DNA of 36,480 nucleotides, taken from assembly GCF_001194135.2 (NCBI RefSeq), contig NC_068983.1:126079038-126115517 (forward strand), in the 5' to 3' direction. Numbering within the stretch: position 1 is the stretch's first letter; each line of letters opens with the position of its first letter. The position numbers and the translations under genes were made by a program. The notes under the pieces were generated by a model. The model did not search any database, was not told where the DNA came from, and saw only the letters and a program-made list of their open reading frames with translations. The DNA comes from Octopus bimaculoides. Taxonomy: Eukaryota. Positions 11,131 through 34,752 of this stretch are shown one piece after another.

Positions 11131-11334
11131 AAATTTGTAGAGATAAATACGCTAACAGATAAAGAGTAACAAAGACTTGGGAAGAAGCAATATTATACGC
11201 ATAAAAGAATATTACAAATATAGAACTTTAGAAACTTAATTGAAGCAGTTAATATAACCCAGAAAATACCAAAAAGATTAAGTTACGGCTAGAAAAACCC
11301 ATTGAGTATGAAAATCAATTACAATAACAAAATG

Positions 11335-11369
<35 letters not shown>

Positions 11370-11397
11370 ATGCACACACACTTATATACATATACAT

Positions 11398-11795
11398 ATA
11401 TGGTCACGAATGCTGGGTAATGACTAAATTAGTACGATTGCGAATACAAACAGCAGAAATGGCGTTCCTCCGCAACAGTGTGCACACCTTGGAGATCAGT
11501 ATGCCTGGCAAGATAGAGCCGCTACTTATCTGCATTTAGAAGTCACAGCTACAGTACTATGAACATGTGATTAGAATATCACAGGATTGAATCGTAAGAT
11601 ACTTCAAGCTGAACTAGGAAAGACGAAGAACGGTTTGTTCGTATAGCATTTAAAGTTTGAGACTGTCAGGCTTGGAAATCCTGCCGGAATGCCTAGTGAC
11701 TACAGCTTCGGATATTATATTTTGTAGAAGTTACCTTAGGAGTCTACGTTCCCCCACCCCAAGAAATATCGGATAGGTAGGATGGATGGATGGAT
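11398..11795 (+). mobile_element. RTE-clade LINE 3' fragment, decayed
   Basis: YGHECWVMTKLVRLRIQTAEMAFLR...IEPLLICI*KSQLQYYEHVIRI matches the RTE ORF C-terminus (YG.E.W...AAEM.FLR...IE.SQL.W.GHV.R); ends in (GGAT)n. Confidence 0.8.
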
Positions 11796-13789
11796 TTACG
11801 TCAGTTTCGATTAACGCTCATAAGTCCTAGATGCATCCAGATAAAAGACATCTGAGAAACTTATAAAATCTCTCACAGACACGCGGTAGCTTCTGGTCTA
11901 CAGATATATTGTGGTTCCTTTCTAATGTTTCTTCTCCTGCTCTTCTCTTCCTTTGAAATTAACTTAGCTAATGCCTCTTTTATCCACACACGCTCGACTC
12001 ATTAAAGACCCCTCTTACAGTTACCCTTCTTTTTATCTACCACCCTCCAGGACCCGGGCAGTCATTATCCGGAGGCTTTTCCGCAACGTCAGCCCTCTGA
12101 AATTATTTCACTACGCATGATATATCCAGAGTATTTTCAGTCACACATGTTTAATTGAAACGTGAATTGCATCAATCTTATCGGTATAGAATGGCCTGCG
12201 AAAGCCATGGTTACTCCCCCTTCCTCAAGACACAGTTCTTAGGGTGCAAACGACGTGAAACTATGTGACAAAGCTGCATCATTTAAAGTCAGTAGCATTC
12301 CTGATAGAAAATCAGAGATAAGAATATACCTATGTTCTGGATTGATATTTTTTGAAGTGATAGAATGCATAATTGATTTCAGTAAGAATTCAACTCCGTG
12401 GAAAGAATTAGAACGAAAACGCAAATCATTCTATAAGATCTATGATAATTCTATCAATGTGCATCATTTCTGTATTATATAGTCATAATCAAGAAGAGGT
12501 CTTGACTTCTCAAAAAATCCTAACTGAACATCAGTTTTCAGTTTTCAATTCTCTTAGGTATTGAATAGATGTGACAAGGAATTTCTTATCTATATTGAAT
12601 AACGTATTCATTGATTCCTTGAAATAATTCATATATCTCTCTCGTAGAATTGTAATATTTACTTAAGACATAAGGCGCGACAGGCCACGATCATGGCCGT
12701 CAGATAGAGGTCGACAGGCCTCGATCGTGCGCCAGATAGATGCATTTAATTTGAGCGTTTGTTGGTTGGTGTCTAATATCACTCAAACGCTCTGATATCC
12801 ACCCACCCCGAGAGTACAAGTGGACTAATAGTTCAACTAATGACTTTTCAGTTGATGTAAAACTTGCCCCCATTATTTACTAAGAAGATATTTTAACTAA
12901 TCTTTTTGTTTTTTAGGTGTGCAATGTAGTCTCATTTTCATAAAATGTGCTCAGCAGTGCGTGCTATGTAAGTGCAAATTCCTGCGCTTCATCGGTTAAA
13001 CAATATCGGATTAAAATCAGAAAATCCTTTAACTACTTGAACTGTACTACAAGCGGTAACAAATGTTATGATTATGCTGATAAATTTGTTGAGTTTACCG
13101 AATATATATCGTATATTTCATATGCCTGAAATATAATAGTATAACCCAAAGCAATTAATTTTAACTGATACTTCACCTCCTCTTGTTCGAAGACAAACCA
13201 ATTTTTTCCTATCATGACAGATATGACAAATGCGATTCGCTTGTAAGAAGCATTCTTTAGTTAAACATAAACTAATTTGTAAGAGATGCAGACGATATTC
13301 CTGATATAGACTTGCCTCAAACAATACTTCCAGACAACTGGAGGCTAGAAACGACATGCGTTTCCGCAACGGCAACCAAATTACAAAATATGTAAATTAT
13401 TAAGTATTATATAACAATTACAACCACATCAATCATACACGAACGCTCACATATCACACTAATAGAACTTCATGAACTGTTCAATGAACACATACACATA
13501 CTAGAGTATAACAAAACGTTAATATATACGGTGAAACATAAAAATAATTTAAATATATTGAGGCAAGTTGAAAGTTTTGTAATATTTACATAGCTGTTAG
13601 CTTGCAGTGAGTAAATAACAAGATCCAAACAGTTCAGTATGTCGAAGATGTCTGATGATATTGGTAGTATCGTGATAGTTGGTGCGCTGATATGTTGCCG
13701 CATTTGATTACAGTACTGTAATCATATAGTTCAAAACATTTCGCTCAGGTTGCTGAACCTCGACGTTGAAGAAAAGTAAATTAGGTCTA

Positions 13790-14220
13790 AAAATATGGAT
13801 TTCAACGCTGTGTTCTAAGCCATAGCGGCAAATCTGACGAGCTTCGAAACTTACGAAAGTATGCCACTGTGAGGCGAAAATCCTCGGTTTTGGTTGACAG
13901 AAATCGGGATCTTCTGCAGCAAGACTGCGCAACACTTTATTCCACTCGAACAACCCTGAATAACTCCGAACTTCAACGAATCGAACCAATGTCAAACAAC
14001 ACCATGCATATAGGGTGGACATAGCTCTTTCGGATTACAACAGCTCGGATCCATGGTTCACTTTATGCACTCGCAATGTTTCACCAACCAAGAAGAGGTG
14101 GAAGCTTCAGAGAAGGAGTTCTTCATCTCGAATGAGAAAATCCCGTACCAGCGTGGGATCAAAGAACTTGCAGAAAGGTTGCTTAAGACGATGCAACTTG
14201 ATGGACTCTTCTTAGACTGA
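13790..14220 (+). mobile_element. Mariner transposase C-terminal fragment, decayed
   Basis: LVDRNRDLLQQD...IALSDY...SMVHFMHSQCFTNQEEVEASEKEFF...YQRGIKELAERLLKTMQLDGLF matches the mariner LLQQDNA / SPDLAPSDY region and C-terminus. Confidence 0.85.
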
Positions 14221-14588: not shown

Positions 14589-15460
14589 NNNNNNNNNNNN
14601 NNNNNNNNNNNNNNNNNNNNNNNNNNNNNNNNNNNNNNNNNNNNNNNNNNNNNNNNNNNNNNNNNNNNNNNNNNNNNNNNNNNNNNNNNNNNNNNNNNNN
14701 NNNNNNNNNNNNNNNNNNNNNNNNNNNNNNNNNNNNNNNNNNNNNNNNNNNNNNNNNNNNNNNNNNNNNNNNNNNNNNNNNNNNNNNNNNNNNNNNNNNN
14801 NNNNNNNNNNNNNNNNNNNNNNNNNNNNNNNNNNNNNNNNNNNNNNNNNNNNNNNNNNNNNNNNNNNNNNNNNNNNNNNNNNNNNNNNNNNNNNNNNNNN
14901 NNNNNNNNNNNNNNNNNNNNNNNNNNNNNNNNNNNNNNNNNNNNNNNNNNNNNNNNNNNNNNNNNNNNNNNNNNNNNNNNNNNNNNNNNNNNNNNNNNNN
15001 NNNNNNNNNNNNNNNNNNNNNNNNNNNNNNNNNNNNNNNNNNNNNNNNNNNNNNNNNNNNNNNNNNNNNNNNNNNNNNNNNNNNNNNNNNNNNNNNNNNN
15101 NNNNNNNNNNNNNNNNNNNNNNNNNNNNNNNNNNNNNNNNNNNNNNNNNNNNNNNNNNNNNNNNNNNNNNNNNNNNNNNNNNNNNNNNNNNNNNNNNNNN
15201 NNNNNNNNNNNNNNNNNNNNNNNNNNNNNNNNNNNNNNNNNNNNNNNNNNNNNNNNNNNNNNNNNNNNNNNNNNNNNNNNNNNNNNNNNNNNNNNNNNNN
15301 NNNNNNNNNNNNNNNNNNNNNNNNNNNNNNNNNNNNNNNNNNNNNNNNNNNNNNNNNNNNNNNNNNNNNNNNNNNNNNNNNNNNNNNNNNNNNNNNNNNN
15401 NNNNNNNNNNNNNNNNNNNNNNNNNNNNNNNNNNNNNNNNNNNNNNNNNNNNNNNNNNNN
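14589..15460. other. Assembly gap (872 N)
   Basis: N run; ORFs that cross it are artefacts. Confidence 1.
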
Positions 15461-15598: not shown

Positions 15599-15838
15599 TG
15601 TGGTTGACTGTTATTAAGACAAAAGAGCTAAGACCGCTAAGTAAGGGAAGGAATTAGAGGTAAGGGAGTAGAAATGTCTATGGTGTTCGCGTAAGCGCAC
15701 CAATCTGTACATTCGCCTATATGTATATACTCAACCACGCTCGCTTGAAACACACATACTCTCCCACATGCTCGCCATAAACTATATATTTAACCAACTC
15801 ACGAGGAAATAAACTCACAACGAGTTACGAAACCAACA
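15599..15838 (+). mobile_element. Possible 5' LTR of the Gypsy element
   Basis: TGTGG...CCAACA ends, TATA-like tracts, AATAAA near 15808, 42 nt before the gag ATG; no PBS seen after it. Confidence 0.35.
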
Positions 15839-15880
15839 AATCTTTTTTGTGCAAATTTTACTGCAAAGAATCGTAAAATT

Positions 15881-18800
15881 ATGGAACATTTTTTGGCCGG
15901 TTTGCTCCAATTGTAAGATCAGTAACAAGAGCAACTAAAAGAACAACAACAGCAGAAGCAACAACAACAACAATTACTATTACAGCGAAAGATGCTGCAA
16001 GCAATAAATAGTATGTCATCAGGAAATGCTGAAAAAGTTTTCTCGCCATTTGAGGTTGCCAAATCGATAACAATGTTTAAGTACGAACCAGGTAAAGGAG
16101 TTGCTTTCGAGGCGTATTATCGGAGATACCAACAAATATTCGACAAAGTGTGCGAAGATAGGAACGACGATATGAAAATTGGCAGCAAGAGACCATGAGC
16201 GTTACATCAATTACGTACTCCCGAAAAAACCTTCTGACATAAACTTAAAAAATACAATAGACATATCGTGTAAAACTTTTAGTGAGAAAAGCTCGTTGTT
16301 CAATACATGTTGGAAATGTTTGAACCAAGAAAAAAAAAACAAACAACGAGGAGGAATACATCACATATACTATTAGAGTTAACAGGGATTATGAAAAGTT
16401 CAAGCTGGACCAATTTATGCCAGACATGTTCAAGTGTCTGATTTTTACAAAAGGACTGACTGCAGAAACAAACGCAGAGGTAAGAACAAGAATTCTCACT
16501 AATCTAGAACATAAGTAAGCTGAAACGTAACCAAGCTGTTGCCATACAACAATTGTCAGATGAGTGTGTAAGAATAGTAGATTTAAGAGAACATAAAAAA
16601 TTAAGAGAACATAAAGATTGCTCCCAAGTGAAACAAGTGCGATTTAGAAAACAACTGTGTACCAAAATACAGTCCAAACAGGACAAGAGCAAGAAAAAGG
16701 CGTGTTTGCATATGGCGGTCTACACCAGAGAAAAAAGTGACCATTTAAGACAGGCGAATGCTTCCGTTCTGAAAATGTTCTCACACAAAAGCGCACGGTA
16801 AAACTAAGATGACAAAACGTCGGAACAAAAGAAAGAGAATAAACAGGATGTCTTCGAAAGAAAATAGTAATATAACAAAAAGGAAATTTGTAAATGTGAA
16901 AATTTTAAAATAGAAGATTAAAAATGCAGTTAGATAATGTAAATAATATTAGCATTGTAAATGAAGAAACATGAAAGTATGTCGCTAGGCCGAAATTAAT
17001 TAAATCTATAAAAGTCGCGCATGGCGTTACGGGCAAAAGATTGTATTTTATTAGTGAATTTGTGTATAATGTAACATTTCATGACCAAATGAAAACGGCA
17101 AAAATATGTGCTAAAAAATTCAGTTAATTAATTCGGCATAGAATTGTTCAAATTATGGAATACGCCCATAAGTGTTTTGTATGGGAATATAATCGGTTAA
17201 GACGAAGGTTCGAATGAGGCTGAGGAACTGAAACAAAAAGTAAAACATTTATTTCCAGATGTTTTCTCGGAGGAACTGGGATGTTGCACGAAAACGAAGG
17301 TAACAATTGCTGTAAAACAAAGTGCATCGCATGTATTGAAGCCAAAACGGAATGTACCCTTCACAGAAATAGACCAGGTAAATAAAGAACTTGAAAGACT
17401 TCAAAGCCTAGGAATAATCGAGAAGATGGACCACTCAGAGTAGGCAGTACATACGGTCTGCATAGAAAACAAAAGTTAAGAGTTCATGCAGATTTTTCAA
17501 CAGGTTTGAATGATTCGTTAATCTCACATAACTACCATTGCTGAGTCCTGAGGACGTGTGTGCAATATTGAATGGAGAAAACTCTTCTCAAAATTAGATA
17601 TCTCGGAGGAATATCTACAAATCCAAGTAAAAGAATGGTCTCATTTATTAACAATTAATACACGCAGTGGCTTATTTAAATTTAAGCGGCTTTCCTTCGG
17701 TGAAAAGAGCGACTCCTCCAATATGTCAGCAATAAATGGATAAAATACTGGGTGACTGTGACTTTGTTATCGCCTATTTAGACGAAAATCTAATAAAAAG
17801 TGAATCACAAGAGCAACAAGTAGAACACGTTAAAAGGGGATTCGAGAAGATAAGAGAATACAGTTTCAAGTTCACGGAAGACAAAAGCGAGTACTTTATG
17901 AAAAAATATTAAATACTTGTGCCAGATAATAGATAAACATTAACGAAAGGCGGATCAATTCAAAGCAACTGCAATGCAAAATATGCCCACGCTGAATAAT
18001 GTGACTATGCTACAAGCATTATTGGGCTTAGTAAATTATTATCAAATTTACAGTCCCAATATACATAATATAATGGCCCCACTCAATGATTTGTTAAAGA
18101 GAAATAAAAAATGGTGTTGGACTCATAAGTGCCAGAAGGCATTTGCCGAGTTAAAATAATATCCTCACACCGGACTTATCGTTAAAGCATTTTGATCCAA
18201 AGTTGGATATCATACTGACTACGGATGCAAGTGATTACTGTGTCAGAGCCGTATATATGACGATGGCAGTAAAAAGGCTATAGCCCACCCAAGCGTCACA
18301 ATTATTATTACGGCTGAAAAGAACTATAGTCAGATATAAAAGGAAAGTGTAGTATTCATATTCGGTGTGAAAAATTTCCATAGATTTTTCATGGAAGACG
18401 TTTCTGTCAAGAAACGGATCATCGCCCACTACTATCAAGATACGGTTCTCGTAATGGAATGCTAACAGACACAGCAAATAAACTACAGCGATGGGGCACT
18501 ACATTATTGAATTATGATTACAACATGGAATATTTACCGTAAAAAGGAAAAAGACTATGGCATTTGGAGGGTTTGTTCAGACTGATACCGAAACACTACA
18601 ATCCATTGGAAGATAGAATAATTACAGCATTAAGATCAGAAGGAGAAATAAAAGAAATGTAGAATGTGGTACACGTATTACAGGTAACTCTATAAGACAT
18701 GAAACGGAATGCGGTAGCGGACAAATCCATAACAGAAAGGAAAAGAATATTGTGGTCAAGAGAAGTAAGTAGGAAAAGGATTTGTGTGAAACGAAACCGA

Positions 18801-19616
18801 AACGTGGACATATACTCATTTTCTGATGGCATACTGATGCATGCACAGAGAATAGTGATACCTGAAACACAACAATGAAAATATTGAAGGAATTTCCTGT
18901 TGGACATCCTGGTATTTTGAGGATGAAAGCTTTAATGCGTAGTTACGTGTACTGGCCAAAAATGGATACAGAAATCTAAAATTTAGTGAAAGGCTATAGA
19001 GGACGTGCTCTAGCAGCAAAATTACCGACAATAAACAGTGAACCTTGGCCAAATGCAGATATTACGTATTTGACACTACACATCGATTTCGCTAGTCCTT
19101 TGAACTGTTCATACTACTTCGTGGTAGTTGATAGTTTTTCTAAATGACTAGAAATTTGTAAGTATATAAAACCAACGTCCTCAAATCTGACAATTTTTTT
19201 ACATGAGCTGTTTGAAAAATTTGGCATCCCAGACGCTGTAGTGTCCATCAATGGAACGCAATCTGTGTCTTTTGAATTTAAAATTCGTGACACAAGAACG
19301 GAAAAAGTTATGAAGGTGGCATAATTAACAAACGCATAGGAAAAATGCTATACTTGGTAAAAAAAAAGTAGAATAGGGCTACACAAAAGACACATGAACC
19401 AACTGAAAAAACAAAATTCGTTGAGAGCGAACCCAAGAGAATGGAAGAACCAATGAAATGGTTAGATGATACTTTTCAAGTACCAACGCCACTGCGACTG
19501 ATTGAACTGAGACGCACAAGCGTAAGAAAAAGAAAATCTACGGAGTTCCTAGAGGTGGATGCCAAACGGAAAAGCTATTAAACGTGTAACTAACAAAAAA
19601 ACTCAAAAATGGGAGG
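15881..19616 (+). mobile_element. Decayed Gypsy (Mag/K02A2.6-like) gag-pol
   Basis: Gag SITMFKYEPGKGVAFEAYYRRY, HERYINYVLPKKP; RT FPDVFSEELGCC, FSKLDISEEYLQI, YLDE; RNase H TDASDY, TDHRP; integrase GHPGILRMKALMRSYVYWP, LHIDFASP, VVDSFSK, FGIPD. Many stops/frameshifts, integrase core deleted after NGTQ; PPT-like aaaaatgggagg at 19605-19616. Confidence 0.95.
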
Positions 19617-19697
19617 TGGACTGATATAAAAAAAGTATTGCTATTAAAACAGCTAAAACAGCACACCCGAAGAAAAGGAAAAACTTAACAGGGGAGG

Positions 19698-19902
19698 TGT
19701 TGCGGGGATAATACTAATGATGGTACACTCCTCCCTTGTGACGAATATAATGCGGCTGTCGCTATAAATAATTTGACGTCAGTGAGTATAGGGACAGAGT
19801 ACGAAATAGACGTTCTTAGATAGTGATGTTTTTACTGGTCTAACAAATATGCTGTTATACCGATGTGGGTGAGGTAACAATCCGACATTAAGCATTACAA
19901 CA
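19698..19902 (+). mobile_element. 205-bp LTR with a PPT before it and a PBS after it
   Basis: aggggagg (19690-19697), then TGTTG...CAACA, then gtggcgac (19903-19910). Confidence 0.8.
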
Positions 19903-20106
19903 GTGGCGACAAAGACACAATAGTATAGATACTAAAAAAGGCGGCTATACGCAATATACAACGAAGCAAATATTCAGTTGTCACTAATTGCGACTGAGGT
20001 GAAGGGTAGAACATTTCTAGAAATATGATCTAAGAGCCCTTGGGGCCGGGGAGTAACGCATGTCTACGTACTAACATGGGAGATAACCGCCCCCCCCCCA
20101 GCTAGC

Positions 20107-20167
20107 GAGTTCATCATACTAGACTAGTTTCGCTTTGAATTAAAAGCTCATCAGTGATGACTACACT
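20107..20167 (-). ncRNA. Type I hammerhead ribozyme, canonical core
   Basis: Minus strand: UCAUCA CUGAUGA GCUUU-uaauuc-AAAGC GAAA CUA-guc-UAG UA / UGAUGA. Perfect 6-bp stem I, 5-bp stem II, 4-bp stem III; cleavage predicted between 20117 and 20116. Confidence 0.9.
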
Positions 20168-20432
20168 AGGTCTATGAACTCGCTATTTGTATGTGCATAT
20201 CCATGTGTTCTTTGTGGCACTATGGGTTTTCAGCTCTTAATTCTACTAATATAGGTGCTACTTAGTCACAATTAGTGACAATTAATTTTTTAATTTTTGG
20301 TTTTATATTGTGTATAGCCGCCAGCGTTATTTTATAATTTCCACATCGCTACTTTACTGAATCATCCACTGATTTATAAGGTAAATCATATATATAGTGA
20401 TAGCGTGAATTTAGCCAAGCTATCGAGCGACG

Positions 20433-20490
20433 GAGTACTCATCACTGATGTGATTTAGTTAAAAGCGAAATTAAATTCGTATGATGATCC
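20433..20490 (+). ncRNA. Degenerate paralogous hammerhead
   Basis: UCAUCA CUGAUGU gauuu-aguua-aaagc GAAA uuaaauucg UA UGAUGA; A9-to-U change and weakened stems II and III. Confidence 0.7.
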
Positions 20491-20621
20491 ACTTGCTATG
20501 GAGTGTTTACCTCCCCTACCAGTACATAGACATGTGTTCCTTTCCGGCCCTTAGGGCTTTTAGCACATATTACTAGCAATGTAGGTGCTACCCTGCACCA
20601 ACAGTCACAGTTAATGACAAT

Positions 20622-20647
20622 CACACACACACACACACACATGTATA

Positions 20648-20745
<98 letters not shown>
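20622..20745. repeat. (CA)n(TA)n(TG)n compound microsatellite
   Basis: Consecutive dinucleotide runs. Confidence 0.97.
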
Positions 20746-22183
20746 TGTGCTAGTGTGCGTGTTTGTGTACAAAAAAACAACAGACCTGCATATATATATA
20801 TATGTGTACTTAGCTGAATATACATGTATACACACAACTTTATTAGAACACATACAATGCGAATTATACACACAAATAAACACACATATGGGCATACACA
20901 CGCGCAAATCTAATAATGTATATCAATGCAAATGCATATTTGCATACACACACAAATAAATCCAGCGCTTGAAGATCTTTAACCTTTGATACACAAAACC
21001 TAAAGATAAAGTACACAAACAAGCAGGTTAACAGAGGATCAGAATTAAAAATAGAGGAAATGTTCATGTGTCTCACGTAACTATGTGCTATGCTGAAAAT
21101 ATACTGACTTTGAAATATGCAGGAAACCAAAAATTAATTGGCATGATACTTACATGTAAACAATACCAGAGAGTGGAATGAGCAGTAAAATATATAATAG
21201 AAAACGAACCAAGAAATATATCCTTCAGTTAAATGAAGATCCACTCATACTACAGGTGTGGATATATATGTGCTCCTACAAAAGAATAATGGTGGTTACA
21301 AAATAGGGAATAAATAATATATAATGCATTAAGAAATGTAAAACTATACTTAAGATATGAATGTAGCTGAGGTGAGAAGTAAAGTAAGATGTTAAAACCT
21401 ATGTTCCGTAGCTGACAATATGTGCATCTCTGATCATGAGTAGAAGTAGTGGGGGTGCATGAGAGACATGTATGAGGAAGGTTTATTTATGGTTTGAATA
21501 AACATAATAATAGTAAAGTTTGAAGGAAATATAAGCCATTTTTCGTACTTTCTAGGGGTAAGCGAATCGAAAATAGCAATTGCTACTCAAGGACAAAAGC
21601 TATGTTATACGGTGTTATTTATTATACAATAAAGAGTATTATAATTATTAAAGTTTCAAACTTAAGCATCCATCACGTGACCAAGAGTATAGAATATAAC
21701 ACCTCCCATCATCATACATACATCTTTCGTGATCATAACGATATTGTACATGTTATAACAATTTTGGAGGTCATAACAATATTGTATAAAATGTAATAAT
21801 TTTCCTTATCATGATCAAAAATGTATTGGCGAACAATAATATCCATCTTGTGCTCATAACTATATAATACAGACCATAGCATCTATCTTGCGATTTTCCC
21901 TACATTTTCGTGACTATAACATCCATCTCCAGCAATGCAAGTAGCAGATGTGTATATGCTTTAAATGTTGAGTTACGTTAACAAATAATTAATTGTATTA
22001 TTTGCTTAGTTACTTTTACAATATTGTTATTTCTAATCGCACTTACTTTTATCATGGTACAGTTATTATACAGTAGTTCAAATTAAAAATGTAAAAGAAC
22101 CCTAATAATGTGACTTCTTTCGTGAATGTCTGATCAGTTCAGGAAATAGTTTCTTCATTTACAATATCAGGGATTTGTTATAA

Positions 22184-23614: not shown

Positions 23615-25646
23615 CGCTGGCCAACAAATTCTAACTTTATTCTACTGACGTACGTTTCAAATCTATTTTGGGGGTAATTTGGGGTCCCTAAGAGTTAAAA
23701 TGGGAATAGTAGTATTCTATCACGTCGACATTTTTTTCTATGGGCTGGTCCATATTGGCCCCACCTGTAGGTCAATGTTTCAGAAATTGCTCGATGTGTT
23801 TTTCGTAAGGTACGCTTGCAGTAAGTCTCAGTGTCAATTGAGCGTTCAGTGGGGGAGGATGTGACGCTCTGGCGATCTAGTATATTTACCTGCGTAGAAG
23901 TGTATTTCCTAATAAATGTGTGCTCGAACTTCGACCGTCTTAATTTGTGTTGTTAATCTCTTTTTACTATCAACAAATATATAAAAGATATCATTTCTGT
24001 TGAATATTTATTTTATGTATGTGTTTAGACATCAGCTTAGACAAACCTAGATATATAAATATATTCTGTATTATTTTCTCTCCTGGGGGTTCGGTAGCAT
24101 GGTGTTACTACGAAGGAAATGTTTGAATCCCCAAGACACTTTTTGTTTTATATGTGGGTGTTTTACAGTACCAGTTCAAATAATGAACATTGGTGACTTT
24201 GTGAAAAGATCCTACTTCACTTTCTTTACGTTTAAATTTGCTGGTCAGGACACGTCCTGGGCTCCGCACAATTTATGTAAACCCTCTGTCGAAACTTTTA
24301 CGCCAATTGACAAAGGACACCAGGAAACCACTAACATTTAGCATTCGTATGGTATGGTGGCAGACAAAAGAAAAAAAAACAGATAAACGATTGCTACTTT
24401 TGTCTCACAAAGACCTCTGGTTATAGGAAGAGAACGCGACAGAAAATGTTATTCAAATCTGGATTCAACAACCCGTTTTCAAGGATCTACCTCTACTGCA
24501 AGATGTAAGTGATATATGTGAAGTAGAAGTAAATCATGAACATGACAGTGATACAGACATTTTAGAAACATCAACCAAAGAACATGAAAACATCGACCAA
24601 GCATAACTTATGATTTAGTTAGAGACCTAGGACTGTTAAAAGAGTATCATAATTGTTAGCTTCTAGGTTTAGAGAGAATAATCTATTGCAGAAAGAAACA
24701 AACGTGACTTTTTAACAAAACTGTCTTTTTATCTGAACTGGAAAATATTTTGCTTACTCTTTTGACATGACGGGACTGTTAAACATGATGGGTGTTGAAC
24801 AGTACGATCTTAGTGAATGGAAACTCTAGATAGTTCAAAGAGGAGCCTAAAGTGTGTATTACTCCGTAATGGAAAATTGTTTGGTGCGTTTCCTATTGGT
24901 TAGTTAGTGCAGATAAAAGAGGATTTTGATTACATAAAAGTTGTATTAGATTCCCTCAAGTATTATGAACATAAATGGGTCATATGTCTGGATCTAGAAA
25001 TGATCGTCTTGCTTGGCCAATATCCGTATTTCATGTGTTTATGGTATAGTCGAGTGAGAGACAAATATTGGGAGCAGAAACTCTTGCCAGTTAGTAAGAG
25101 TTTGCCATTTGGGAAGAAGAATATCATCTAGGAACTATATGTTGAGGGAGCGAAAATCATCCACTCCCTTCATATTAAACTAGGACTAATGAAGATATCA
25201 AAGATATCAAGGCGGATGGAGCACACACATGACGGCGGACTACTGTGGGAGTGTTCAAAGAGACTGTGTAGACATGAAACACTCCTGATGCTTTCGAAAG
25301 CGAAATTTTGTTTCGTGATTGTGAAGACATATGCATGATTATTTGTGTTTTATCCATCATATTAGAGAATTAACAGTATGTATTTAGTAAAATGTGTTGC
25401 CATTTTACATTTCATTTATCATTTCATATTCTATTGACATCATAACATATGGTCTGACGCTAAAAGACTTAGTAAACAATCCTGAGCAAGTAGATTATTT
25501 ATAGAGTACATCATAAGGAAGGAATATGCTACAGAATGAAAACCTTATGTTAGAAAAAAATAGATATCACATTTGAAATCAACAACTAAGAATTAACTAA
25601 AAACAATCACAACACCAAAGTCACCAAAGAGGTGTGTTGACCAGTG
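23615..25646 (+). mobile_element. Chapaev3-type (CMC) DNA transposon, internally deleted
   Basis: TIR cgctggccaaca / tgttgaccagtg (10 of 12 match), TAA on both sides. Transposase remnants CLNPQDTFCFICG, DQD-like WAPHNLC, KWVICLDLEM, FMCLWYSR, PLHIKLGLMK, DYCG. Confidence 0.85.
24099..25320 (+). pseudogene. Chapaev3 transposase pseudogene
   Basis: ORF pieces 24099-24341 and 24907-25131 plus LHIKLGLMK near 25170; frameshifts; region between GLMK and the C-terminal QDI..ME segment is missing. Confidence 0.8.
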
Positions 25647-34130: not shown

Positions 34131-34752
34131 NNNNNNNNNNNNNNNNNNNNNNNNNNNNNNNNNNNNNNNNNNNNNNNNNNNNNNNNNNNNNNNNNNNNNN
34201 NNNNNNNNNNNNNNNNNNNNNNNNNNNNNNNNNNNNNNNNNNNNNNNNNNNNNNNNNNNNNNNNNNNNNNNNNNNNNNNNNNNNNNNNNNNNNNNNNNNN
34301 NNNNNNNNNNNNNNNNNNNNNNNNNNNNNNNNNNNNNNNNNNNNNNNNNNNNNNNNNNNNNNNNNNNNNNNNNNNNNNNNNNNNNNNNNNNNNNNNNNNN
34401 NNNNNNNNNNNNNNNNNNNNNNNNNNNNNNNNNNNNNNNNNNNNNNNNNNNNNNNNNNNNNNNNNNNNNNNNNNNNNNNNNNNNNNNNNNNNNNNNNNNN
34501 NNNNNNNNNNNNNNNNNNNNNNNNNNNNNNNNNNNNNNNNNNNNNNNNNNNNNNNNNNNNNNNNNNNNNNNNNNNNNNNNNNNNNNNNNNNNNNNNNNNN
34601 NNNNNNNNNNNNNNNNNNNNNNNNNNNNNNNNNNNNNNNNNNNNNNNNNNNNNNNNNNNNNNNNNNNNNNNNNNNNNNNNNNNNNNNNNNNNNNNNNNNN
34701 NNNNNNNNNNNNNNNNNNNNNNNNNNNNNNNNNNNNNNNNNNNNNNNNNNNN
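34131..34752. other. Assembly gap (622 N)
   Basis: N run. Confidence 1.

What the first reader, a model, noticed from the sequence alone, without database searches (positions are those of the whole stretch)
19940..20620. Retrozyme-like array: ~310-340 nt repeat unit carrying a canonical type I hammerhead ribozyme
Seen: the minus strand 20160-20111 reads UCAUCA-CUGAUGA-GCUUU(uaauuc)AAAGC-GAAA-CUA(guc)UAG-UA-UGAUGA, with every core nucleotide present and three closing stems. A second, degenerate copy lies on the plus strand at 20439-20487. The plus-strand array starts at about 20172, within a few nt of the predicted cleavage point, and repeats with a ~310-340 nt period. No RT or endonuclease ORF is nearby. 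Established: short ribozyme-to-ribozyme tandem units with type I hammerheads and short stem III are the hallmark of non-LTR retrozymes and Penelope-like element terminal repeats, which yield small linear and circular RNAs. Inference: this is a non-autonomous, ribozyme-processed retroelement family in a cephalopod, possibly with an abundant circRNA.
Basis: partly seen in the sequence, partly recalled or inferred. Interest (0 to 1): 0.85.

Follow-up and report, generated by a model that had tools for sequence, protein, structure and literature searches.

The report
Decayed hammerhead-ribozyme repeat relic
A complete hammerhead self-cleaving ribozyme motif sits in one of three old, diverged copies of a short non-coding repeat in octopus-like DNA; it is most likely a dead remnant of a known kind of ribozyme-carrying mobile element (animal retrozyme or Penelope-related), not a working array.

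Summary
The motif is real. Minus strand 20160-20111 carries every hammerhead core nucleotide and three helices of 6, 5 and 4 bp, with predicted cleavage at 20117/20116. A motif this good is expected about 3e-5 times per window, roughly 2 per 2.7-Gb genome. No Rfam model reaches its gathering score (best 24.9 bits against 48.5).

The "array" is small. Copy A is inverted (20166-19940) and joined head-to-head to a 5'-truncated copy B (20167-20322). A 116-nt tail and copy C (20439-20620) follow, and C's ribozyme is broken (A9U, helix III lost). Copies are 72-77% identical. B-to-C spacing is 329-330 nt. A (CA)n(TA)n(TG)n microsatellite cuts C.

This layout (inverted 5'-truncated copy, partial tandem, microsatellite edge) matches published Penelope-type insertions. 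Unit size, 40% GC and lack of ORFs fit animal non-LTR retrozymes.

"No RT nearby" is wrong. A degraded Gypsy-type LTR retrotransposon fills 15.8-19.9 kb, and its LTR ends 37 nt from copy A. Its relatives are in Octopus bimaculoides.

Genomic copy number, stem covariation, cleavage and circRNA could not be tested. This locus cannot release unit-length RNA by double self-cleavage.

Verdict: a likely new member of a known kind, of modest interest.

The parts
20111..20160 (-). Intact-looking type I hammerhead of copy A. Helix I 5' strand 20160-20155; CUGAUGA 20154-20148; helix II 20147-20143 paired with 20136-20132 (loop 20142-20137); GAAA 20131-20128; helix III 20128-20125 paired with 20121-20118 (loop GUC 20124-20122); A17 = 20117; predicted cleavage 20117/20116; helix I 3' strand 20116-20111. 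A possible outer extension is GUG 20166-20164 paired with CGC 20107-20105, across a 3x3 internal loop.
   Evidence: Sequence read directly. Only descriptor hit in the window, with 0/3000 random windows as good. Chance estimate 2.8e-5 per window. Sub-threshold Rfam hits. Canonical fold -9.8 against MFE -12.0 kcal/mol; helices I and II are probable, helix III has P about 0.04 in cis.
19940..20110 (-). Body of copy A: 171 nt downstream of the cleavage site, ending ...UAUAGCCGCC at 19940. It includes a G10 run (20100-20091) that is absent from B and C.
   Evidence: blastn A against C, 73% over 192 nt; A against B, 77% over 62 nt. MAFFT alignment.
20167..20322 (+). Copy B, 5'-truncated inside its hammerhead. 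Only a helix III remnant is left (20167-20174). The homologous cleavage position is 20174/20175 and the body runs 20175-20322, ending TATAGCCGCC. B is joined head-to-head to copy A.
20323..20438 (+). 116-nt tail or spacer between the body of B and the ribozyme of C. It is present only once in the window and completes the roughly 307-330-nt cleavage-site-to-cleavage-site unit.
   Evidence: No match elsewhere in the window or in L003/L004. Direct-repeat spacing 329-330 nt.
20439..20487 (+). Degenerate hammerhead of copy C. It has A9->U (CUGAUGU), a mismatch and a 1-nt deletion in helix II, and helix III reduced to A-U and U-G. The GUA site is 20479-20481.
   Evidence: No Rfam hammerhead match even at E<=10.
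20488..20620 (+). Body of copy C, cut short by the microsatellite. It lacks the last roughly 45 nt seen in A and B.
20621..20770 (.). Compound microsatellite (CA)n(TA)n(TG)n at the 3' edge of the repeat.
   Evidence: It yields only spurious sub-threshold miRNA-family matches.
19698..19916 (+). Context. A 205-nt LTR (TG...CA, 19698-19902) of the neighbouring Gypsy-type element, followed by a primer-binding-site-like TGGCGACAAAGAC (19904-19916). It lies 23 nt from the end of copy A.
   Evidence: Alignment with the LTR/PBS regions of O. bimaculoides loci L003 and L004. This is the only LTR copy in the window.
15785..19697 (+). Context. Degraded internal region of a Ty3/Gypsy-type LTR retrotransposon with many stops and frameshifts: gag-like DUF7083, RT, RNase H and integrase.
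   Evidence: Pfam on read-through pieces: RVT_1 30.2 bits (cut-off 29.6) and Integrase_H2C2 31.9 bits (cut-off 25.5); RT_RNaseH_2, rve and DUF7083 fall below their cut-offs. Best protein relatives are O. bimaculoides K02A2.6-like proteins. DNA identity to L003/L004 is 74-78%.

Best explanation
This is a dead, rearranged remnant of a short, non-coding, hammerhead-carrying retroelement. It is of the animal non-LTR retrozyme / Penelope-related kind and sits in a TE-rich stretch of an octopus-like genome.

Inferred history: a multimeric or unit-length RNA of a roughly 310-335-nt element was reverse-transcribed by a Penelope-type machinery supplied in trans. The element consists of a type I hammerhead, a roughly 170-nt body and a roughly 115-nt tail. 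Integration produced the typical composite of an inverted 5'-truncated copy (A) joined head-to-head to a partial direct tandem (B-tail-C), with the 3' ends pointing outward and one end in a microsatellite. The copies then drifted to 72-77% identity.

Shown: the motif, the three copies, their orientation and junctions, the spacing, the microsatellite edge, and the lack of ORFs.

Inferred: retrotransposition, the Penelope partner, and past ribozyme processing.

Today only copy A keeps a catalytically plausible ribozyme. A minus-strand transcript could be cut once, after A20117. There is no second working ribozyme on either strand, so the locus cannot release monomeric or circular RNA. In its native context a stronger alternative hairpin competes with the active fold.
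For: The complete hammerhead core and three helices are the only such motif in the window, and 0/3000 random windows match it. Expectation is 2.8e-5 per window.

A homologous second ribozyme sits at the same place in another copy. It is 80% identical, against 73% for the whole unit, and both helix I strands and the core blocks are intact.

Direct spacing of 329-330 nt and a unit of about 307-335 nt fall within published retrozyme ranges: 150-450 bp in PMC7229834, and averages of 313-342 bp in insects and Anthozoa in the 2026 preprint. GC is 0.40, below the published 45% limit. No ORF exceeds 48 aa.

Copy B begins at the position homologous to the cleavage site.

The layout matches the Penelope insertion anatomy described in PMC8557442: an inverted 5'-truncated copy abutting a partial tandem, with a bias towards (CA)n/(TA)n microsatellites.

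Helix III is stable enough to resemble the canonical invertebrate type rather than the minimal PLE type.

Type I hammerheads have already been annotated in a cephalopod genome: 235 Rfam hits in the giant squid, PMC6962438.

Failing the Rfam cut-off is weak evidence against. Complete bacterial or phage-type hammerhead motifs on metagenomic locus L002 also fail it.
Against: No copy outside this 680-nt locus could be found. None is elsewhere in the window. None is in 41 kb of O. bimaculoides DNA. None was found in the viral, metagenome or prokaryote collections, which do not hold the source genome.

All Rfam hammerhead scores are below gathering.

There are only two ribozyme copies, so there is no covariation. 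The differences in C break pairs rather than compensate for them.

Unit RNAs are not more structured than shuffles (z = -1.06 and -0.68).

Helix III is improbable as a cis hairpin (P about 0.04).

In the native context the predicted fold is a -31.6 kcal/mol hairpin that disrupts helices I and III.

No Penelope-type RT or GIY-YIG remnant was seen in the window. The check was limited to selected ORFs.

About 2 chance motifs of this quality are expected per 2.7-Gb genome.
Confidence: 0.55

Rival explanations
1. This is a terminal (pseudo-LTR) fragment of an autonomous Penelope-like element, not a separate non-autonomous retrozyme. The repeats would be what is left of a PLE's tandem or inverted terminal repeats after the RT-endonuclease ORF was lost by truncation or deletion.
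For: The inverted 5'-truncated copy, the partial tandem and the microsatellite edge are exactly the PLE insertion signature, and hammerheads lie in PLE pseudo-LTRs (PMC8557442). Retrozymes and PLE pseudo-LTRs are phylogenetically intermingled (bioRxiv 10.64898/2026.07.22.740005). Penelope elements are reported in cephalopod genomes (PMC6962438).
Against: No PLE-like ORF remnant lies next to the repeats. Downstream is microsatellite and unrelated sequence, and upstream is a Gypsy-type LTR. PLE hammerheads are described as atypical minimal variants (PMC7229834), whereas this one has a 6-bp helix I and a 4-bp helix III. The roughly 330-nt ribozyme-to-ribozyme period fits retrozymes.
Confidence: 0.2
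2. The hammerhead motif is a chance match inside an ordinary unclassified local repeat, such as an old inverted or direct segmental duplication or a foldback or MITE-like element, with no ribozyme biology.
For: About 2 motifs of this quality are expected by chance per 2.7-Gb genome, and the finding was selected by eye for the motif. No Rfam model reaches threshold. There is no thermodynamic signal. There is no evidence of a family beyond this locus. A and C form an 83-190-nt inverted repeat about 270-400 nt apart, which resembles a foldback element.
Against: The per-window probability is about 3e-5. The motif coincides with independent retrozyme-like traits that were not used to find it. These are the 330-nt period, the copy boundary at the cleavage position, the PLE-type inverted and tandem junction, the microsatellite edge, low GC and the absence of ORFs. 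The homologous copy C keeps both helix I strands and three core blocks despite about 27% overall divergence.
Confidence: 0.15
3. The hammerhead units are cargo of a Gypsy-type LTR element, arranged as LTR-PBS-hammerhead units. This would be an animal analogue of plant LTR retrozymes, mobilised by the neighbouring element's family.
For: An LTR (19698-19902) followed by a PBS-like TGGCGAC... lies only 23 nt from copy A. That is the start of an element's internal region, not a normal 3' end. The same LTR family has coding copies in O. bimaculoides.
Against: There is no second LTR anywhere downstream in the window. The copy nearest the LTR is in the opposite orientation. The LTR itself holds no hammerhead, and the motif is type I rather than type III. 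Two other copies of the LTR family have an ordinary gag leader after the PBS and no hammerhead unit. Simple juxtaposition in a TE-rich region explains the data.
Confidence: 0.04

Closest known systems
Metazoan non-LTR retrozymes (Cervera & de la Pena 2020, PMC7229834; mussel, coral, axolotl)
   Same: Type I hammerhead at the unit boundary; a unit of roughly 300-350 nt; head-to-tail arrangement; GC below 45%; no coding capacity; mollusc host lineage.
   Different: Only about 1.4 direct units plus an inverted copy are present. The copies are 23-28% diverged and one of the two ribozymes is dead. Unit RNA is not predicted to be highly self-paired. Copy number and circRNA are unknown. No cephalopod retrozyme turned up in four literature searches; one search listed only 15 of its matches.
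Penelope-like element insertions and their hammerhead-bearing pseudo-LTRs (PMC8557442; Cervera & de la Pena 2014, as cited there)
   Same: An inverted 5'-truncated copy adjacent to a partial tandem; insertion edge in a (CA)n/(TA)n microsatellite; a hammerhead in the repeated terminal sequence.
   Different: No RT/GIY-YIG ORF is present. The hammerhead is canonical-looking (helix III of 4 bp) rather than the minimal PLE variant.
Amphibian satellite 2 / axolotl HHR_Amex repeats (330-350 bp)
   Same: Nearly the same period (330 nt) and a type I hammerhead. Helix III is weak in cis and could form in trans between two units; the duplex ACUAGUCUAGU x2 is predicted at -10.9 kcal/mol.
   Different: Those repeats form huge arrays of 60,000 motifs per family, with a 1-2-bp helix III and conserved loop 1-loop 2 contacts. 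Here there is a single relic locus and the loop contacts have not been assessed.
Plant LTR retrozymes (PMC4918200)
   Same: Non-coding and hammerhead-bearing, and here physically next to a Gypsy-type LTR and PBS.
   Different: The plant elements carry type III hammerheads inside two flanking LTRs. Here the motif is type I and lies outside the single LTR, and there is no second LTR.

Membership tests
Hammerhead ribozyme, type I | Conserved catalytic core (C3 U4 G5 A6 N7 G8 A9; G12 A13 A14; A15.1-U16.1; H17 not G) | tested here: met
   Read directly at 20154-20148, 20131-20128 and 20118-20117. Descriptor hit.
Hammerhead ribozyme, type I | Three helices around the core, with helix I open (5' and 3' ends in helix I) | tested here: met
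   Helices I/II/III are 6/5/4 bp, and 0/3000 random windows are as good. Helices I and II have ensemble probability 0.5-0.97, but helix III has only 0.04 in cis.
Hammerhead ribozyme, type I | Match to a curated Rfam hammerhead covariance model at its gathering score | tested here: not met
   No gathering-level hits. Best scores are Hammerhead_3 at 24.9 against 48.5 bits and RAGATH-1-hammerhead at 16.9 against 56.3 bits. Complete hammerhead motifs on L002 fail it too.
Hammerhead ribozyme, type I | Compensatory changes in the helices across related copies | tested here: inconclusive
   Only two ribozyme copies exist. Helix I is identical in both, and helices II and III of copy C are broken rather than compensated.
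Hammerhead ribozyme, type I | Site-specific self-cleavage (after A20117) | not testable with these tools
   This needs in vitro transcription. A competing -31.6 kcal/mol hairpin is predicted in the native context.
Metazoan non-LTR retrozyme | Type I hammerhead in each unit of a 150-450-bp head-to-tail repeat (dimer to multimer) | tested here: inconclusive
   B-to-C spacing is 329-330 nt, but only about 1.4 direct units are present. B has lost its ribozyme and C's is mutated. TRF does not report it.
Metazoan non-LTR retrozyme | Low GC (below 45%) and no coding capacity | tested here: met
   GC is 0.40 over 19940-20620. The longest ORF is 48 aa and partly microsatellite.
Metazoan non-LTR retrozyme | Multi-copy family dispersed in the genome | not testable with these tools
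   The source genome is not searchable here. No copy was found elsewhere in the window, in 41 kb of O. bimaculoides, or in the viral, metagenome or prokaryote collections.
Metazoan non-LTR retrozyme | Highly self-paired unit RNA | tested here: not met
   z = -1.06 for the 308-nt unit and -0.68 for copy A, against dinucleotide shuffles. These are decayed copies, so the consensus could differ.
Metazoan non-LTR retrozyme | Expression as linear and circular unit-length RNA | not testable with these tools
   No RNA data are available. This locus lacks two working ribozymes on one strand.
Penelope-like element (autonomous) | ORF with PLE-type RT and GIY-YIG endonuclease | tested here: not met
   No such remnant was seen among the window's ORFs. 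Only a Gypsy-type RT, RNase H and integrase were found. The check covered selected ORFs and was not an exhaustive profile scan.
Penelope-like element (insertion anatomy) | Partial tandem plus an adjacent inverted 5'-truncated copy; microsatellite target bias | tested here: met
   A (minus) is joined at about 20166/20167 to 5'-truncated B (plus). B-tail-C is a direct tandem. The (CA)n(TA)n(TG)n tract starts at 20621. Compared with PMC8557442.
Plant-type LTR retrozyme | Hammerheads inside two flanking LTRs, with PBS and PPT | tested here: not met
   There is a single LTR, 19698-19902, without any hammerhead, and no second LTR in the window.

The most novel reading that the evidence does not exclude
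The hammerhead units are the internal cargo of a non-autonomous Gypsy-type LTR element (LTR-PBS-hammerhead repeats). This would be an animal counterpart of plant LTR retrozymes and would link type I hammerhead repeats to LTR rather than Penelope machinery. A milder reading, also not excluded (about 0.3), is that this relic belongs to a still-active cephalopod retrozyme family that makes abundant circRNAs of roughly 310-335 nt.
Probability: 0.04. Interest if true: 0.7.

Novelty: new member of a known kind. Interest (0 to 1): 0.3.

Why it matters
If a genome search confirms a family, this would extend hammerhead retrozymes to cephalopods. Type I hammerheads have been counted there by Rfam annotation (235 in the giant squid, PMC6962438), but no paper found in the library searches here described them as retrozymes. 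The head-to-head A/B junction and the microsatellite edge give a concrete example of Penelope-type integration of a ribozyme repeat. That is relevant to the recent proposal that animal retrozymes derive from PLE pseudo-LTRs. On its own this locus is an inactive relic. It opens no new question and adds no new mechanism.

Tried and rejected
1. Rfam at gathering thresholds over the whole window gave nothing. E-value mode on three sub-ranges gave only sub-threshold hammerhead hits for copy A and none for copy C.

2. Tandem Repeats Finder does not report the repeat, because there are too few and too diverged copies.

3. More copies were sought in the flanks (19000-19939 and 20770-21800, both strands) by Smith-Waterman against shuffles. 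None exceeded the null.

4. I looked for family members elsewhere.
- A hammerhead-pattern scan of the metagenome contigs returned two unrelated bacterial or phage-type motifs, L001 and L002.
- The same scan of the viral contigs returned 0.
- Body-pattern scans of the prokaryote genomes and viral contigs returned 0.
- These collections do not hold the source genome, so absence there means little.

5. A protein route to other copies was rejected.

6. The SINE idea was checked with a tRNA scan. No tRNA-like sequence was found.

7. The LTR-hammerhead-LTR architecture was rejected because the window holds only one LTR copy. No hammerhead unit is present in two other copies of the LTR family.

8. 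There is no thermodynamic support. z-scores run from -0.7 to -1.6 for the ribozymes and units. The only marked value, z = -2.35, belongs to the competing A/B-junction hairpin.

Selected stop-free pieces and read-through pieces were used instead.

10. Literature searches.
- No paper combines "hammerhead ribozyme" with "Octopus bimaculoides".
- No paper prints this ribozyme's sequence strings.
- No supplement is held for PMC8557442.
- There are no cephalopod terms in the supplement of PMC7229834.
Full report
THE OBSERVATION

Reading the sequence directly, the minus strand from 20160 to 20111 is UCAUCA CUGAUGA GCUUU(UAAUUC)AAAGC GAAA CUA(GUC)UAG UA|UGAUGA. Every invariant hammerhead position is present: C3-A9, G12-A14, the A15.1-U16.1 pair and H17 = A. 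The usual G10.1-C11.1 and U1.1-A2.1 pairs are also there. The topology is type I, with helix I open.

A descriptor scan I wrote finds this as the only hit on either strand of the window. It requires CUGANGA, helix II, GAAA, helix III closed by A15.1-U16.1, H17 and helix I. The helices here are 6, 5 and 4 bp. Of 3000 first-order Markov random windows, 15 held any relaxed hit and none held one this good. Multiplying the component frequencies gives about 2.8e-5 per window, or about 2 per 2.7-Gb genome. The motif is therefore far beyond chance for one window. It is not so rare that a genome-wide hunt could never turn one up by accident.

RFAM

No family reaches its gathering score. With E-value reporting the best match is Hammerhead_3 at 24.9 bits (cut-off 48.5, E about 1e-3 to 1e-2). 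That alignment is a permuted reading which deletes helix I and so is not a viable ribozyme. The RAGATH-1-hammerhead model reproduces the type I reading at 16.9 bits. What Rfam recognises is the core plus helix II.

I give this failure little weight. The metagenomic contig L002 carries two textbook-complete hammerhead motifs and gave no gathering-level hit either.

Thermodynamics neither helps nor hurts. The canonical three-helix structure is -9.8 kcal/mol against an MFE of -12.0. Helices I and II are highly probable in the ensemble. Helix III has probability about 0.04 as a cis hairpin, while two units could form it in trans at -10.9 kcal/mol.

THE REPEAT

blastn and MAFFT show three copies of one unit and nothing else like it in the window or the flanks.

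- Copy A lies on the minus strand, 20166 to 19940. It holds the ribozyme and a 171-nt body ending UAUAGCCGCC.
- Copy B lies on the plus strand and is joined head-to-head to A at about 20166/20167. It has lost the 5' two-thirds of its ribozyme. It keeps a helix III remnant and then the sequence that follows the cleavage site (UGAACUCGCUA from 20175). Its body runs to 20322.
- A 116-nt tail seen only once (20323-20438) leads into copy C.
- Copy C runs from 20439 to 20620. Its ribozyme (20439-20487) is 40/50 identical to A's. It carries A9->U, a damaged helix II and essentially no helix III. Rfam sees no hammerhead in it.
- C is cut about 45 nt before the end of the body by a (CA)n(TA)n(TG)n microsatellite at 20621-20770.

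Pairwise identities are 72-77%. B-to-C spacing is 329-330 nt. The distance from cleavage site to cleavage site is 307 nt in this copy. It would be about 335 nt with the segment that B lacks.

The "array" is thus about 1.4 direct units plus one inverted copy, and Tandem Repeats Finder does not report it. GC is 0.40. The longest ORF is 48 aa and partly microsatellite. There is no tRNA-like part.

THE SURROUNDINGS

The statement that no RT or endonuclease ORF is nearby is wrong. Stop-free pieces on the plus strand between 15.9 and 19.6 kb read as gag, RT, RNase H and integrase. Pfam gives RVT_1 at 30.2 bits and Integrase_H2C2 at 31.9 bits, both above their cut-offs. RT_RNaseH_2, rve and DUF7083 fall below theirs.

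The best protein relatives of the RT are Octopus bimaculoides "K02A2.6-like" proteins at 49% identity. Two O. bimaculoides loci fetched through them (L003 and L004, chromosome CM046603.1) are 74-78% identical to window 15.8-19.9 kb at DNA level. This supports a cephalopod origin, probably an octopod, without fixing the species.

Aligning those loci defines a 205-nt LTR (TG...CA) at 19698-19902. It is followed by a primer-binding-site-like TGGCGACAAAGAC, and copy A ends 23 nt beyond that. It is the only LTR copy in the window. The place where a 5' LTR would lie is next to an N gap at 14589-15460.

L003 and L004 hold neither the repeat nor any hammerhead motif. The repeat is therefore not part of that LTR family. 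The two are neighbours in a TE-rich, rearranged region. No Penelope-type RT or GIY-YIG remnant was noticed, though only selected ORFs were profiled.

WHAT IT MOST LIKELY IS

The traits that were not used to spot the motif all point the same way:
- a non-coding, low-GC unit of roughly 330 nt with the ribozyme at its boundary;
- a copy that starts at the cleavage position;
- an inverted 5'-truncated copy abutting a partial tandem;
- an edge in a (CA)n/(TA)n microsatellite.

The first two are the published description of animal non-LTR retrozymes: 150-450-bp units, GC below 45%, found from molluscs to arthropods (PMC7229834). [quoted passage not shown] A 2026 preprint argues that animal retrozymes derive from PLE pseudo-LTRs and that most families have few repeat units and many monomers.

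My best explanation, at confidence 0.55, is a relic of such an element. It would have been reverse-transcribed from a ribozyme-bearing RNA by a Penelope-type machinery acting in trans, and has since decayed.

The rivals are:
- a pseudo-LTR fragment of an autonomous PLE (0.2);
- a chance motif in an ordinary local repeat (0.15);
- hammerhead units as cargo of a Gypsy-type LTR element (0.04).

WHAT THE LOCUS CAN DO NOW

Releasing a unit-length RNA, the precursor of a circle, needs two working ribozymes on the same transcript. On the plus strand B has none and C's is mutated at A9 and lacks helix III. On the minus strand A stands alone. At most, a minus-strand transcript is cut once after A20117.

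Even that is uncertain. In the native context the antisense of B's start pairs with A's post-cleavage sequence in a 12-bp helix. The predicted fold (-31.6 kcal/mol, z = -2.35) replaces helices I and III. The unit RNAs are not more structured than shuffled controls, so the "highly self-paired" trait of retrozyme RNAs is not seen in these decayed copies. An abundant circRNA, if it exists, must come from other copies.

WHAT COULD NOT BE DONE

The source genome is not in any searchable collection here. Pattern scans of the metagenome, viral and prokaryote collections found only unrelated bacterial or phage-type hammerheads, or nothing.

In the literature held here, no paper combines "hammerhead ribozyme" with "Octopus bimaculoides", and none prints this ribozyme's sequence. 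The giant squid genome paper lists 235 Rfam Hammerhead_1 hits without further analysis.

VERDICT

This is probably a new, so far single-locus, member of a known kind and not a new kind of system. Interest is 0.3. A genome-wide search for the unit is the cheap, decisive next step.

Noticed in passing
window 15785-19902 (+): Degraded Ty3/Gypsy-type LTR retrotransposon (gag-like DUF7083, RT, RNase H, integrase, 205-nt TG...CA LTR) with many stops and frameshifts. It is 74-78% identical in DNA to two loci on Octopus bimaculoides chromosome CM046603.1 (L003, L004).
   Followed up: yes
window 19904-19916 (+): The only LTR copy in the window is followed by a primer-binding-site-like TGGCGACAAAGAC, as a 5' LTR would be, although it sits 3' of the pol remnant. 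This suggests a tandem or recombinant LTR-element arrangement that was later truncated. No 5' LTR is seen after the N gap.
   Followed up: partly
window 20621-20770: The compound microsatellite (CA)n(TA)n(TG)n is a near-perfect long palindrome. It produces a string of sub-threshold Rfam miRNA-family matches (mir-3149, mir-1277, mir-297 and others) that are artefacts of the simple repeat.
   Followed up: partly
window 20264-20279 (B), 19984-19970 (A, minus), 20595-20610 (C): A small hairpin, GUCAC-AAUUA-GUGAC, is kept in copies A and B, where an A->G change in A gives a G-U pair. Copy C keeps it except for the closing pair. A second hairpin, GCCC-NNN-GGGC, is kept in A and C. These are possible structured parts of the unit RNA, but three copies are too few to test it.
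   Followed up: partly
window 20091-20100: A C10 run (G10 on the element's strand) lies inside copy A. It belongs to a roughly 25-nt segment that copy B lacks and that is different in copy C.
   Followed up: no
L002 446-512 (+) and 1014-1077 (+): A 2.3-kb metagenomic contig (Ga0181591_10107176) carries two complete hammerhead motifs. One has closed helices I and II and open helix III (GCUGUC|UGACGC...GCGUCA CUGAUGAG...CGAAACAGC). The other has an 11-bp helix III. Neither reaches an Rfam gathering score. They are unrelated to the window's repeat.
   Followed up: partly
window 14589-15460 and 34131-34752: Two runs of N (872 and 622 bases) are scaffold gaps of a short-read assembly. The first lies where the 5' LTR of the Gypsy-type element, or the continuation of the repeat, could be.
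   Followed up: no
window 13700-14220 and 11312-11536 (+): By eye, the stop-free translations resemble a mariner-type transposase C-terminus (13.96-14.22 kb) and the tail of a LINE-type RT (11.3-11.5 kb). Pfam found nothing in these pieces, so this stays an impression.
   Followed up: partly
window 24051-25335 (+): Several adjacent stop-free pieces with cysteine-rich and conserved-looking motifs (for example CFICGCF...GQDTSWAPHNLC) look like a degraded transposon-derived ORF. Pfam gave no match.
   Followed up: partly
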